Assembly (NCBI RefSeq): GCF_002113885.1
Contig: NW_018407615.1
Location: 1,095,620-1,159,619, forward strand
From: Mizuhopecten yessoensis
Taxonomy: Eukaryota
Length of the DNA: 64,000 nt
Direction: 5' to 3'
Within the stretch, counting starts at the first letter, position 1. Every line of letters starts with the position of its first letter. A program made the position numbers and the translations under genes. The notes beneath the pieces were generated by a model, which did no database searches, was not told the DNA's origin, and worked only from the letters and a program-made list of their open reading frames with translations. Of this stretch, positions 40,218 to 48,745 are shown one piece after another.

Positions 40218-40255
40218 GCCAGCACTTACTAGGCATTTTCACCACACTCTTTCCC
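40218..40255 (-). repeat. Polypurine tract (GGGAAAGAG) plus truncated 3' LTR
   Basis: GCCAGCACTTACTAGGCATTTTCACCACA at 40218-40246 equals 48717-48745; purine tract 40255-40247 abuts it. Confidence 0.85.
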
Positions 40256-40425
40256 GTCATATTCGAGCGGTGGTCCAGCCGTCCTCGGCCAGCAAGGCTC
40301 TCGGTTTAATACCGGTGATCCAGGGTTACCCGGTATCGGCCCCCTAGATCAAGGTAATTAAGGGTTACCCGTCCTCGCCCCCCCCCCCCCTAGAATTTGG
40401 AATCCTGGCTCCCGCGTCTCGGGAC

Positions 40426-42173
40426 TCAGAAAAGATTGTTTCCGTTCCGATCGGTCAACTCCAGTACCCCAGGCAAACTGATGACCCCCGGATCTGAGAG
40501 ATACGACGGGCGGTATGGTCCACCAAGTGTGGAGCGCTGCAGGGGAACTCGGGGCTGACCGAATAGTAGGGCGCATCTGTCTCTATTAGGAGTCTGGTGG
40601 ATGGAATGCATTTCACACCATGGCGTTGGGCGTCGTTGAATTTCGACACCATCCTTGACACGCTGAAGCAGGTGTTAGGGAAACGCGTCAGCCAGGCCTG
40701 AATCACTTCTTCGGTGCCACTAAAGCAGTGCAGCTGGATCTTCTGCTCTGGTGGGACCATCTTCCTCACCACATCCAGGCACCTCATGTAGGCTTCAAGC
40801 CCCGTCGGGTCATCCCTCAGTCCCTGGATGTGCAGGATGAGTGCCTGGCGGGGCCGGGTGCACGGGAGCAAGCTCCGCAACTGCTGCTCCTGGCGAAACC
40901 ACAGGTCCGGGGAACGAACGGTATGGTCAATCCCCACCTCACCAAATCCTGCCACTTCCGGGACCTGTAGAAGATCCAGGAATGTCTGTTTTTGTGACGG
41001 GTGAGGAAGTGCTTCGGGTGCACTCCTATCGCCACTAAATACCCGTCCCGGGTCAGCTCTGGTATCTCCCCCGGAGAAGGATATGTATCGGGGTCGCAGA
41101 ATACCGCCACTCCAGACATGCTGAGTGCATATTCCTTCGAAGTGACAGGTATTGCGTCCTCCACCTCCCTCATTGAAGCGTCCTTCTGTAGTCTCAGCTT
41201 CCGACGGGCCCGGTCCAGGTGGAAGTGGCTATCGAAGGCATGGAGCATGGGTAAAAGGTCCACGCCGGGGGACTCGACCTCGAGCTCCCCCGAGGGTTCT
41301 GGGTCTTCTTCCAGAATGGCTCCCAAACACACTGGTGTGGGTACCTGCTGGGGGATTGCTTCGGCATAGGTGAGGCCCAGGTCCGTCAGGGTAGGAGATG
41401 GCAACGCCTCAGCCATCACCTTCAGTCGGTAATCTGCCAGCCATCTGCAATCAACCGGTATCGGTTGAGGTGGTCGCAGAGCTCCTGGAGAGTGGCTCGG
41501 GGTCCCAGCATGCACTTGGCCATCGTGACCAAGCAGGAGTACCGAGTGAGTGTGAGCTCTTCAGACAGCTCGACCTCGAGCTCCCCCGAGGGTTCTGGGT
41601 CTTCTTCCAGAATGGCTCCCAAACACACTGGTGTGGGTACCTGCTGGGGGATTGCTTCGGCATAGGTGAGGCTCAGGTCCGTCAGGGTAGAAGATGGCAA
41701 CGCCTCAGCCATCACCTTCAGTCGGTAATCTGCCAGCCATCTGCAATCACCCGGTATCGGTTGAGGTGGTCGCAGAGCTCCTGGAGAGTGGCTCGGGGTC
41801 CCAGCATGCACTTGGCCATCGTGACCAAGCAGGAGTACCGAGTGAGTGTGAGCTCTTCAGTCGGTCGGCAACGTCTTCGTCGCTGGGGTAGCTTACAAAT
41901 ATGCTCACTTACCCACTGGTCTGAGAACAGGGAGGTCGCTGCACCAGCCGCCTTACGGAGCCAAGGCTTGTTGTCCATCCGAACTGCCACGGCCACCTGG
42001 CCAAGAACAATGCTCTCAAGGTGGTCCGATGTCAATTTGTCATTCAGGAACAGTTCCCTGAATAACCCCTCATCATCCATCAGCCGCCCGTCGGAGGTGG
42101 CGTCCTCCTCCAGTCCTAGCAGCCTCCGTTTTGGGGAAATCTGTGTGGGATTCATCACTGCCTCAGTTGAATC
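40426..42173 (-). pseudogene. ORF3: unknown N-terminal region plus TatD-family metallo-nuclease (frameshifted, internal duplication)
   Basis: Motifs in TatD order: FDSHFHLD, AIGVHP, GFGEVGID, LILH, QLHCFSG, FSVS, IPSTRLLIETDAPY, LTDRNGNNLF, spread over ORFs 40817..41515, 40455..40955 and 40426..40611. Confidence 0.9.
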
Positions 42174-42211
42174 CTGCAGAAGAAATAAAACCACAATATA
42201 TAAGAATACTT

Positions 42212-47573: not shown

Positions 47574-48476
47574 GATTGTTGGTAATAAGTCCGATTTGTA
47601 TCTCGGAATGAAAGGAAAAAAACAAACTGAGCCTCAGTTTAATTATTTCAGGATAAATCTCTGTATTCCCCCTCCTTCATCAGACGCATAAAAACACAAA
47701 TCTAATAAACCTCACGGAACATGCAATATAGTAATAGAAGGATTGAATTTATAAACCTCAATAAATTACTCTTAGTGTATTGTAGGTTATGTAGTCATAT
47801 GATGATCTTTATAATCCTCAATAAATGTTCATGTCATAACACTGAGTTCCATAGAAGTACATGTAGTTCAATTCAAATATCAACAATTCTCTCATTATCA
47901 ATATAGTAACTAATTCGAAATTTATATACCTCAATAAATCTCAGTACTCCAATAAATAATAACATTTATATGCATCAACTTATGGGAATGTTATCTTATC
48001 CTATTTAGGTTGTATTCTGTTAGCATGTATCAATATCACCAATGATACCCGCTGAAAACCTTACAGCTGATTTATATTCATGCTAACAACCTCAAAGTAT
48101 ATTGACACACTTGGCCTGGCTATGTCATATACTGCTAGATATACAAGCACAACTAGCTGAGTACAAGTGTACCGGATGTAAACAATAGGCTTATTGTTAA
48201 CCACTTCCGGCATCCCCAACATTCCAGTGAAAATGGCGTCACAACTTAGCCTCGTTGTGAAATGTTCCTTTCACTCGCTTCACAATTTATACCAACCAGT
48301 TTTTTTGGGGTTTTTTTGGGGGGGTTTCGTTATGTTTTCATTATTATTGAATAAAGAAAATATTGTACTAGTTAACTAATAAATTTCAAGCAAATACCTC
48401 AGCTTAAGGAGGTGCGTGCCACGTGAAAATTGACTTCAATTTCCTTACACGTGCATTCCCCGCTCGCAAAAATTTT

Positions 48477-48487
48477 CCTCGTCGCCA
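48477..48487 (-). promoter_or_regulatory. Primer binding site
   Basis: TGGCGACGAGG directly after the LTR; TGG complements tRNA 3'-CCA. The priming tRNA is not assigned. Confidence 0.8.
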
Positions 48488-48488
48488 A

Positions 48489-48745
48489 TGTTGTATTTCT
48501 ACAAACTAAAGGGCAACTCACCAGGATAGTTGTCAAACGTCCAGGTGAGGTCCGCCAGGCTGGCAGGTCCTAGCAGAAACGATAGAGTTATTCGGTCCAG
48601 TATATACGGGCTAATCAGCACACGTCTGTTACTTTCATTAGTTCGATCATCAAGAGCGGGTCTCGAACGGTCACGTGACCTCTGCTCTGATGTCTAGATC
48701 ACCCAGAGGCTTGATAGCCAGCACTTACTAGGCATTTTCACCACA
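48489..48745 (-). repeat. 5' LTR (257 bp)
   Basis: Minus strand starts TGTGGTGAAAATGCC and ends ATACAACA, one base before the PBS. Its first 29 nt match 40246-40218. Confidence 0.85.

What the first reader, a model, noticed from the sequence alone, without database searches (positions are those of the whole stretch)
40218..48745. Three accessory nucleic-acid/chromatin modules in one LTR element (HhH-Gag + IN-PHD + TatD)
Seen: a single LTR-PBS-gag-pol-ORF3-PPT-LTR unit carries a DNA-binding-type HhH, a histone-reader-type PHD and a nuclease. Inference: the combination suggests a distinct Gypsy lineage with a coordinated strategy of binding DNA, reading active chromatin and processing the target or cDNA, rather than three chance captures.
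Basis: partly seen in the sequence, partly recalled or inferred. Interest (0 to 1): 0.85.

Follow-up and report, generated by a model that had tools for sequence, protein, structure and literature searches.

The report
Gypsy retrotransposon with three extra modules
This is a dead copy of a jumping gene from a large, apparently undescribed family in marine invertebrates, whose members share a DNA-binding tag on the coat protein, usually a chromatin-reading finger on the integrase, and a separate nuclease gene.

Summary
The three domains are real and sit in one Ty3/Gypsy LTR element on the minus strand (48745 to 40218). The order is 5'LTR, PBS, gag, pol, ORF3, PPT, then a 29-nt stub of the 3'LTR. 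Gag starts with a ComEA/EEPD1-type helix-hairpin-helix. Integrase ends in a PHD finger of the H3K4me3-reader class. ORF3 encodes a class II (HxH) TatD nuclease of the YcfH/TATDN2 type.

This copy is dead. It has at least 12 frame breaks or stops, a 296-nt tandem duplication inside ORF3, and a truncated 3'LTR.

It is not a chimera. Intact relatives with the same layout, near-identical LTRs and 4-bp target duplications occur in the scallop Pecten maximus and the sea star Patiria miniata. In metagenome contigs anchored on IN-PHD, 17 of 19 testable loci have TatD downstream and 4 of 5 have the HhH Gag upstream.

Co-inheritance is not perfect. A PHD-less sister clade also has HhH-Gag and TatD-ORF3, and a few PHD members lack ORF3.

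TatD metal ligands are kept in 84-86 of 88 family representatives. I found no paper describing a TatD ORF3 or an HhH Gag in LTR elements.

The lineage claim is supported. The "coordinated strategy" is plausible but untested.

The parts
48489..48745 (-). 5' LTR (257 nt, starts TGTGGTG, ends ACA)
   Evidence: Its first 29 nt recur at 40246-40218. The end is defined by the conserved PBS that follows, as in L003 and L006.
48477..48487 (-). Primer-binding site TGGCGACGAGG
   Evidence: The same 11-mer sits directly after the 5'LTR in L002, L003, L005 and L006. Its assignment to a tRNA-Ser 3' end is from memory and was not tested.
46160..47573 (-). gag: N-terminal HhH, charged linker, capsid-like region, CCHC knuckle. 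One frame change near 46716-46771.
47331..47549 (-). ComEA/EEPD1-type helix-hairpin-helix domain at the extreme N-terminus of Gag
   Evidence: HHH_3 in 13 of 14 relatives. Profile against PDB: EEPD1 4e-14, ComEA 1e-9. AF2 model pLDDT 85, top fold match ComEA 8dss. Leave-one-out E=7e-21.
46187..46237 (-). CCHC zinc knuckle of Gag
   Evidence: PF00098, E=4e-8.
42215..46148 (-). pol (PR-RT-RH-IN-PHD), broken by at least 7 frame changes and an in-frame stop near 42703-42734
   Evidence: Pfam hits. tblastn of the intact L003 pol maps collinearly in alternating frames.
42218..42352 (-). PHD finger (C4HC3) at the C-terminal end of integrase
   Evidence: PF00628, E=2e-8. All eight zinc ligands and the W two residues before the His are invariant in 12 relatives. 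Best solved relatives are CFP1, PHF8, BPTF, PHF2, KDM7 and DIDO1.
40458..42215 (-). ORF3 remnant: helical N-domain, short linker, TatD nuclease. Broken by frame changes and a duplication.
   Evidence: Collinear with ORF3 of L003 (P0008), residues 19-98, 422-468 and 600-856.
41862..42107 (-). ORF3 N-terminal domain (predicted 5-helix bundle, no known fold match)
   Evidence: Own HMM E=8e-21, alignment A2, AF2 model. Foldseek found nothing significant.
41273..41860 (.). 296-nt tandem duplication (2 copies, 99% identical) inside ORF3
40476..41254 (-). TatD nuclease domain (class II, HxH), split by a frame change near 41000
   Evidence: PF01026, E=1e-21. The motifs FDSHFHLD, GEVGIDH, LHIQG, LHCFSG and ETDAPY are all readable. 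Own HMM: 1e-69 and 3e-30.
40247..40255 (-). Polypurine tract GGGAAAGAG
   Evidence: Lies directly before the LTR stub. The same position is purine-rich in L003 and L006.
40218..40246 (-). 29-nt stub of the 3' LTR
   Evidence: 100% identical to 48745-48717. Unrelated sequence follows.

Best explanation
The region is a decayed, 3'-truncated copy of a Ty3/Gypsy LTR retrotransposon. It belongs to a large lineage of marine invertebrates, seen in scallops, pearl oysters, a sea star and many invertebrate-associated metagenome contigs.

Shown:
- Members encode a Gag that begins with a ComEA/EEPD1-type (HhH)2 domain.
- In the window's clade, the integrase ends in a PHD finger of the H3K4me3-reader class.
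- A separate ORF3 encodes a 5-helix N-domain, a variable basic linker, and a class II TatD metal-dependent nuclease of the YcfH/TATDN2 type with all metal ligands conserved.

Inferred mechanism:
- The PHD finger tethers the integration complex to H3K4me3 nucleosomes, which mark active promoters. This would parallel the way chromodomains direct chromoviruses.
- The Gag HhH gives sequence-independent DNA-backbone binding. It would hold the particle or preintegration complex on its cDNA or on chromatin.
- ORF3 is probably expressed from its own message and probably goes to the nucleus.
- There it would act as an auxiliary nuclease on replication intermediates, most likely removing RNA from RNA:DNA hybrids or trimming 3' ends. 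This is a second RNase H-like or exonuclease activity.

The window's own copy cannot do any of this because every gene is broken.
For: Architecture and integrity:
- L003 (Pecten maximus): LTRs 100% identical, TSD TAGG, gag 553 aa, pol 1359 aa, ORF3 876 aa.
- L006 (Patiria miniata): LTRs 99.5% identical, TSD GTAC.
- L005, L007 and L008 have the same layout.

Survey:
- 17 of 19 IN-PHD loci with at least 2.5 kb downstream have TatD.
- 4 of 5 with at least 5.3 kb upstream have the HhH Gag.

Tree: the PHD clade has 100% support, with TatD on all deep branches.

Catalysis kept: each of six metal ligands is present in 84-86 of 88 representatives. ORF3 stays open for 588-1095 codons in many loci, with pN 0.36-0.48 against saturated pS of about 0.77-0.81.

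TatD class:
- It has the HxH motif. The best solved relative is E. coli YcfH at 1e-16.
- The best NCBIfam hit is TIGR00010.
- Group II TatDs include TATDN2, which has an extended N-terminus that often carries an NLS (PMC10085689).
- TATDN2 degrades the RNA strand of R-loops (PMC10711561).

PHD class. HhH class.

Precedent for nuclease ORF3s: DEDDy exonuclease in rotifer LTR elements (PMC5408684).

A Tpt1/KptA RNA enzyme in one member fits accessory enzymes that work on RNA.
Against: - No biochemical or insertion-site data exist for any of the three modules.
- The substrate of the ORF3 nuclease is unknown. TatD enzymes are also 3'-5' DNA exonucleases and AP endonucleases (PMC10085689).
- The ORF3 N-domain has no recognisable fold.
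- The second hairpin of the Gag HhH is degenerate.
- One PHD cage position is aromatic in only 9 of 12 relatives.
- Some members do without ORF3 (L002, L010, L047) and a sister clade does without PHD (L089). The modules are therefore separable and need not act together.
- The window copy sits among satellites, not at an obvious promoter.
Confidence: 0.85

Rival explanations
1. The copy is a chimera. An ordinary Gypsy element was joined by nested insertion, rearrangement or misassembly to an unrelated host TATDN2-like gene, and the three domains are together by accident.
For: The window copy is rearranged: an internal 296-nt duplication and a truncated 3'LTR. L001 has an ORF3-like remnant with no pol upstream. 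L004 shows rearranged fragments. NCBI annotates relatives as host genes such as 'TATDN2' or 'YcfH-like'.
Against: ORF3 lies between the PHD and the PPT/3'LTR in intact elements with target-site duplications in two phyla. The same is true in 17 of 19 independent metagenome loci. The window's PPT and LTR stub follow TatD directly. ORF3 relatives are multi-copy within genomes.
Confidence: 0.03
2. The lineage is real, but ORF3 works as a DNA repair or anti-restriction enzyme rather than a hybrid-RNA nuclease. As a 3'-5' exonuclease or AP endonuclease it would clean up damaged or uracil-containing cDNA, or trim cDNA ends before integration. This would be comparable to the dUTPase of other retroelements.
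For: Human TATDN1 and TATDN3 and all three E. coli paralogs, including YcfH, have 3'-exo and AP-endo activity (PMC10085689). YcfH is the closest solved relative. dUTPase and DEDDy exonuclease captures are known in LTR elements (PMC5408684).
Against: The long N-terminal extension with a basic stretch is the TATDN2 pattern, and TATDN2 is the paralog with shown RNA-strand activity (PMC10711561). No data separate the two substrates for this ORF3.
Confidence: 0.3
3. The three modules act independently and were fixed for unrelated reasons. For example, HhH could serve packaging or assembly, PHD could serve safe-haven targeting, and ORF3 could act on the host (host nucleic-acid degradation or defence evasion). 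In that case there is no coordinated strategy.
For: The distributions differ. HhH and TatD occur without PHD (L089). PHD occurs without TatD (L002, L010, L047). A further enzyme is inserted in one member (L090). ORF3 evolves much faster than IN: 50% against roughly 85% amino-acid identity for L016/L020.
Against: HhH-Gag and TatD-ORF3 stay together across the deepest split sampled, which suggests some functional link. There is no direct evidence either way.
Confidence: 0.35

Closest known systems
Chromoviruses (Ty3/Gypsy elements with a chromodomain at the integrase C-terminus)
   Same: A histone-mark reader is fused to the very end of integrase, after the GPY/F-like region. The presumed role is guiding integration (Gao et al. 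2008, as cited in PMC6673714).
   Different: It would therefore point to active rather than silent chromatin. No chromodomain hit was found.
PHD-bearing retrotransposons (CR1-like LINEs of Kapitonov and Jurka 2003; Chlamydomonas REM1 of Perez-Alegre et al. 2005; both as cited in PMC6673714)
   Same: PHD fingers in retroelement proteins are known and widespread.
   Different: Those papers were not readable here. I found no report of a metazoan Gypsy clade with a C-terminal IN-PHD combined with an HhH Gag and a TatD ORF3.
Bdelloid rotifer Juno/Vesta LTR elements with enzymatic ORF3 (DEDDy exonuclease, GDSL esterase; PMC5408684)
   Same: A third ORF after pol encodes a nucleic-acid exonuclease with intact catalytic residues, and the ORF3 is family-specific.
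   Different: The fold and family differ: a TIM-barrel TatD metallo-hydrolase against a DEDDy/DnaQ exonuclease. The host phyla differ, and here the ORF3 is old and nearly universal in the clade.
Cellular TATDN2 / E. coli YcfH (class II TatD nucleases)
   Same: HxH motif plus the Glu, His, His and Asp metal ligands. A long N-terminal extension with a basic stretch, as described for animal TATDN2 (PMC10085689).
   Different: ORF3 is encoded inside a retrotransposon, is intronless and is multi-copy. Its N-domain has no known fold. Its relationship to true TATDN2 orthologues could not be tested because none were among the sequences available.
EEPD1 and ComEA helix-hairpin-helix domains
   Same: A profile of the Gag N-terminus matches the EEPD1 HhH repeats (4e-14) and ComEA (1e-9). 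The fold model matches ComEA.
   Different: Here the domain is fused to a retrotransposon capsid protein, and the second hairpin has lost its glycines.
MLV p12 chromatin tether plus IN-BET targeting (from my own knowledge, not tested)
   Same: A Gag-derived chromatin or DNA tether combined with integrase-directed targeting to active promoters. This is the closest functional analogy.
   Different: There is no sequence relationship.

Membership tests
Ty3/Gypsy (Metaviridae) LTR retrotransposon | pol domain order PR-RT-RNase H-IN | tested here: met
   Pfam hits are in this order in the window and in intact relatives.
Ty3/Gypsy (Metaviridae) LTR retrotransposon | Direct LTRs (TG...CA), PBS after the 5'LTR, PPT before the 3'LTR, short target-site duplication | tested here: inconclusive
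   Window: the 5'LTR, PBS and PPT are present, but the 3'LTR is a 29-nt stub, so no TSD can be read. Relatives L003 and L006 have full LTR pairs and 4-bp TSDs.
Chromovirus | Chromodomain at the integrase C-terminus | tested here: not met
   There is no chromodomain hit. A PHD finger occupies that place.
PHD finger, H3K4me3-reader class | C4HC3 zinc ligands | tested here: met
   All eight ligands are invariant in 12 sequences, including the window.
PHD finger, H3K4me3-reader class | Aromatic cage (Tyr before the first Cys, aromatic residue in loop 1, Phe-Met/Tyr pair, Trp two residues before the His) | tested here: met
   Y117 is nearly invariant, F128 and M129 are conserved, and W138 is invariant. 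The loop position is aromatic in 9 of 12 sequences and is W in the window. The top solved relatives are all H3K4me3 readers. Cage positions in BPTF, PHF8 and PHF2 are recalled from memory.
PHD finger, H3K4me3-reader class | Binding to H3K4me3 peptide | not testable with these tools
   Needs peptide-binding assays.
TatD nuclease, class II (TATDN2/TATDN3/YcfH/YjjV) | N-terminal HxH motif instead of (G/A)xN | tested here: met
   FDSHFHLD is present in the window and its relatives. The class definition comes from PMC10085689.
TatD nuclease, class II (TATDN2/TATDN3/YcfH/YjjV) | Remaining metal ligands (Glu, His, His, Asp) on the TIM barrel | tested here: met
   Present in the window pieces. Each is kept in 85-86 of 88 representatives.
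TatD nuclease, class II (TATDN2/TATDN3/YcfH/YjjV) | Orthology to animal TATDN2 specifically | not tested
   No bona fide TATDN2 orthologue was available. The 20 representatives whose names were checked are TE-like multi-copy proteins or unnamed.
ComEA-like (HhH)2 domain (Pfam HHH_3) | Two helix-hairpin-helix motifs with Gly-rich hairpins | tested here: inconclusive
   The first hairpin, LPGVG, is conserved. The second is replaced by IPRL-type residues. Family-level matches are strong, but the window alone is below Pfam's cut-off (20.8 against 27 bits).

The most novel reading that the evidence does not exclude
A widespread marine-invertebrate Gypsy lineage carries its own integration toolkit. 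A Gag-borne DNA tether and an integrase-borne H3K4me3 reader would bring the complex to active, R-loop-prone promoters. A TATDN2-like ORF3 nuclease would then resolve RNA:DNA hybrids, either of the element or of the target, so that integration can proceed. A corollary that is also not excluded: the long-N-terminus TATDN2 genes of animals and these ORF3s share a direct exchange, either capture by the element or domestication from it.
Probability: 0.12. Interest if true: 0.85.

Novelty: new variant of a known kind. Interest (0 to 1): 0.62.

Why it matters
LTR retrotransposons are known to pick up accessory domains such as chromodomain, dUTPase, extra RNase H, DEDDy exonuclease and MBD. Here two modules that I could not find in the literature, an HhH on Gag and a TatD nuclease as ORF3, are old, conserved and abundant in molluscs and echinoderms. 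In most members they are joined by an H3K4me3-type PHD on integrase.

This gives a natural system for asking how a retroelement chooses active chromatin, and what a TatD/TATDN2-type nuclease does on reverse-transcription or integration intermediates.

There is also a practical point. These ORF3s are currently annotated in invertebrate genomes, and in contaminated bacterial MAGs, as host 'TATDN2', 'YcfH-like' or 'TatD family hydrolase' genes. That can mislead gene-family counts.

Tried and rejected
- Looking up the window's own contig and the Mizuhopecten protein P0002: not on record.
- A word-index search with the TatD N-piece found only 3 proteins. The full HMMER scan was needed.
- Fold search of the ORF3 N-domain gave no significant match, best E=0.76.
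- dN/dS for ORF3: synonymous sites are saturated, so only pN below pS can be stated.
- tRNA search in the window and nine loci, to verify the PBS partner, found no tRNA genes.
- In the IN tree, three rows (L032, P0224, P0227) were cut from the wrong region and gave very long branches. Their placement should be ignored.
- L002 and L047 could not be placed on that tree because their IN region is broken.
- Literature searches for TatD with Gypsy, LTR retrotransposon or ORF3 returned nothing relevant. Papers on mollusc and bivalve TEs do not mention PHD, TatD or ORF3.
- Rejected: the chimera reading; a bacterial origin for contigs labelled as MAGs (they carry complete eukaryotic-type Gypsy elements); and a 'TATDN2 host gene' reading for P0006 and P0008.
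- No contig taken for human was met. No spliced gene model was needed. The N runs of the window (2262-2382, 10576, 10745) lie outside the element and were left alone.
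Full report
**1. What is in the window**

The element lies on the minus strand from 48745 to 40218, exactly the coordinates given.

- The 5'LTR runs 48745-48489 (257 nt, TG...CA).
- It is followed by T and an 11-nt primer-binding site, TGGCGACGAGG, at 48487-48477.
- A self-comparison finds only one repeat of the LTR: a 29-nt, 100% identical stretch at 40246-40218.
- That stretch is preceded by the purine run GGGAAAGAG and followed by unrelated sequence.
- The 3'LTR is therefore a stub, and no target duplication can be read.

Between the ends, the open segments and Pfam hits give this order:

- gag: HHH_3 at the extreme N-terminus, a highly charged linker, a capsid-like region and a CCHC knuckle.
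- pol: protease, RT, RNase H, integrase zinc-binding domain, integrase core and a PHD finger as the last 45 residues.
- ORF3, ending in a TatD_DNase domain.

The element is 45-55% G+C in a 37-40% background.

**2. State of this copy**

Mapping the intact proteins of a relative (L003) onto the window shows the following.

- There is one frame change in gag, near 46716-46771.
- Pol has at least seven frame changes, plus an in-frame stop near 42703-42734.
- ORF3 has at least three frame changes, one of them near 41000 inside TatD.
- A 296-nt tandem duplication (41273-41860, 99% identical) sits in ORF3.
- There is no second copy in the window.

This copy is dead. Even so, the TatD motifs FDSHFHLD, GEVGIDH, LHIQG, LHCFSG and ETDAPY are still readable.

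**3. Are the three domains real?**

*PHD and TatD.* Both pass Pfam's own thresholds (2e-8 and 1e-21).

*HhH.* On its own it does not pass (20.8 bits against a cut-off of 27). However:
- The same N-terminal block is present in every relative recovered, and 13 of 14 hit HHH_3, the best at 1e-9.
- A profile built without the window scores the window's Gag at 7e-21. That is the only hit among 1213 open segments.
- The family profile finds the HhH repeats of EEPD1 (4e-14) and ComEA (1e-9) among solved structures.
- An AlphaFold model (pLDDT 85, above 95 for residues 11-70) has ComEA as its top fold match.
- The first hairpin (LPGVG) is conserved. The second is degenerate.

**4. Is it a lineage or an accident?**

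A full HMMER scan with the TatD piece gave 1941 hits, 489 of them below 1e-10. In the best hits TatD sits at the C-terminus of proteins of 400-1000 residues. The N-termini of these proteins match the segment that lies between the PHD and TatD in the window.

Fetching the genomic context gave intact three-ORF elements:

| Locus | Source | Features |
|---|---|---|
| L003 | Pecten maximus | LTRs 100% identical, TSD TAGG, gag 553 aa, pol 1359 aa, ORF3 876 aa |
| L006 | Patiria miniata (sea star) | LTRs 99.5% identical, TSD GTAC |
| L005 | TARA scaffold | Same three-ORF layout |
| L007 | JGI contig | TatD only 35% identical to the window's |
| L008 | ENA contig | Pol broken; PHD followed by an intact TatD ORF3 |

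All have HHH_3 at the Gag N-terminus where gag is on the contig, a PHD at the pol C-terminus, and TatD in ORF3. The PBS is identical in the window, L002, L003, L005 and L006.

For an unbiased sample I scanned metagenome contigs with an alignment of the integrase C-terminus plus PHD. I then looked for the other two modules with my own profiles.

- 17 of 19 loci with at least 2.5 kb downstream have TatD on the same strand.
- 25 of 31 with at least 700 nt downstream have the ORF3 N-domain or TatD.
- 4 of 5 with at least 5.3 kb upstream have the HhH Gag.
- These contigs come mostly from two samples, so this is a sample of families, not of hosts.

A pol search showed that 100 of the 120 best pol relatives end in the PHD. 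Most of the rest are truncated predictions. Named hosts include Ostrea edulis, Pinctada imbricata and Lingula anatina, plus contaminant contigs in lucinid-symbiont MAGs.

**5. Order of events**

On an IN tree (quick IQ-TREE):
- The PHD clade is one starred group.
- TatD-positive elements sit on all its deep branches.
- The one TatD-less element that could be placed (L010) is nested among TatD-positive ones, which points to loss.
- The window groups with the two intact genome copies (Pecten, Patiria), an ENA protein and the TARA element (95-99% support).

The PHD-less sister clade used as outgroup turned out to have both an HHH_3 Gag and a TatD ORF3 (L089). Its integrase ends in an acidic tail with a conserved basic motif instead of a PHD.

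So HhH and TatD have a wider distribution than the PHD, and the three modules are linked but separable. L002 (HhH and PHD, with an LTR about 460 nt after the PHD) and L047 lack ORF3. One member carries a Tpt1/KptA RNA 2'-phosphotransferase between integrase and PHD, and still has the TatD ORF3 (L090).

**6. What the modules are**

*TatD.*
- It is class II by the HxH motif.
- The closest solved relative is E. coli YcfH (1e-16), ahead of TATDN3 (2e-9) and TatD (2e-7).
- TIGR00010 is the best NCBIfam model.
- Each of six metal ligands is kept in 84-86 of 88 near-complete family representatives.
- ORF3 stays open over 588-1095 codons in many diverged loci. Non-synonymous differences (0.36-0.48) are well below saturated synonymous ones (about 0.77-0.81).
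- The literature places HxH enzymes with TATDN2, TATDN3, YcfH and YjjV. It notes that animal TATDN2 has a long N-terminal extension that often carries an NLS (PMC10085689).
- TATDN2 degrades the RNA strand of R-loops and is an RNA 3' exo- and endonuclease (PMC10711561).
- TATDN1, TATDN3 and the E. coli paralogs are 3'-exonucleases and AP endonucleases (PMC10085689).

*ORF3 N-domain.* It is predicted as a confident five-helix bundle followed by a basic stretch. It has no fold match.

*PHD.* It has all C4HC3 ligands and the cage tryptophan invariant. Its best solved relatives are CFP1, PHF8, BPTF, PHF2, KDM7 and DIDO1, all H3K4me3 readers.

**7. Mechanism**

What is shown is the architecture, its conservation, and the preservation of catalytic and zinc-binding residues.

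What is inferred:
- Integrase is tethered to H3K4me3 nucleosomes by the PHD. This is by analogy with chromodomains in chromoviruses (Gao et al. 2008, as cited in PMC6673714).
- Gag binds the DNA backbone through the HhH.
- ORF3 is a separately expressed, probably nuclear nuclease that acts on RNA:DNA hybrids or 3' ends of replication intermediates.

I rate the identity and lineage claim at about 0.85-0.9 and the specific ORF3 substrate at about 0.3. Rival roles for ORF3 (cDNA repair or end trimming, or action on the host) are not excluded.

**8. Novelty**

- PHD fingers in retrotransposons are known (PMC6673714 and references there), as are enzymatic ORF3s such as the DEDDy exonuclease of rotifer elements (PMC5408684).
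- I found no paper that links TatD with Gypsy or LTR elements.
- Surveys of mollusc and bivalve TEs do not mention these modules.
- The library lacks Repbase Reports and most subscription journals, so prior description cannot be excluded.
- I file this as a new variant of a known kind.

**9. Limits and rules**

- For the tree, the window's integrase pieces were joined with X at the breaks inside the script only.
- The host is most likely a pectinid scallop. A Mizuhopecten protein is 85% identical to the ORF3 piece. The 145-bp satellite next to the element matches a 144-bp satellite in Pecten maximus at 73-85%.

Noticed in passing
L090 90-6071 (JGI 3300045951; protein P0249): A member of the same IN-PHD lineage has a Tpt1/KptA RNA 2'-phosphotransferase domain (PF01885, 4e-43) inserted between the integrase core and the PHD. 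It is still followed by a TatD ORF3, so this is a fourth nucleic-acid enzyme module in the lineage.
   Followed up: partly
L089 3350-11994 (ENA ERZ27251157; pol P0265); also P0263, P0264, P0266, P0271: The PHD-less sister clade has an HHH_3 Gag and a TatD ORF3. Its integrase ends in an acidic tail and a conserved basic motif (SRRxRxIKxPxYLxD[YF]) where the PHD would be. This may be a different chromatin-tethering device.
   Followed up: partly
window 38900-39850: A 145-bp satellite abuts the truncated 3' end of the element. It is 73-85% similar to a 144-bp satellite in Pecten maximus (L003 21866-22628), which points to a pectinid host.
   Followed up: partly
window 5219-9226, 12153-14034, 22578-24143, 62176-64000: The window is dense in tandem arrays (49/147-bp, 29-bp, 31/63-bp and 68-bp units). 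The dead element therefore sits in a repeat-rich region rather than near an obvious gene.
   Followed up: no
window 50160-51701, 52015-52782, 53062-53628 (all minus) and 34489-35562 (+): Long ORFs (513, 255, 188 and 357 aa) have no Pfam hit. The three minus-strand ORFs lie just upstream of the element's 5'LTR and could be another mobile element or a gene.
   Followed up: no
L005, L016, L023, L027, L032: Metagenome contigs often run TatD-ORF3, then an LTR, then the HhH gag of a next element. This is either real tandem arrays that share an LTR, or assembly that walks through the LTR.
   Followed up: no
L004 17300-22600 (Pecten maximus LR736839): The closest relatives of the window copy (RT-RH 78%, TatD 74-76% identical) are rearranged here. 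Two TatD copies in direct orientation (680 nt, 99.4% identical) flank an inverted pol fragment. RefSeq models one of them as 'putative deoxyribonuclease TATDN2'.
   Followed up: partly
L001 8930-11080 (ENA ERZ25069866): An ORF3-like remnant (N-domain plus TatD, with TatD in three frames) has no pol upstream. It is either a fragment or a detached ORF3.
   Followed up: partly
proteins P0034, P0057, P0163, P0256, P0259, P0275: Proteins of this retrotransposon lineage are deposited as bacterial MAG proteins (Sedimenticola, Candidatus Thiodiazotropha from lucinid clams). This looks like host contamination of symbiont bins.
   Followed up: no
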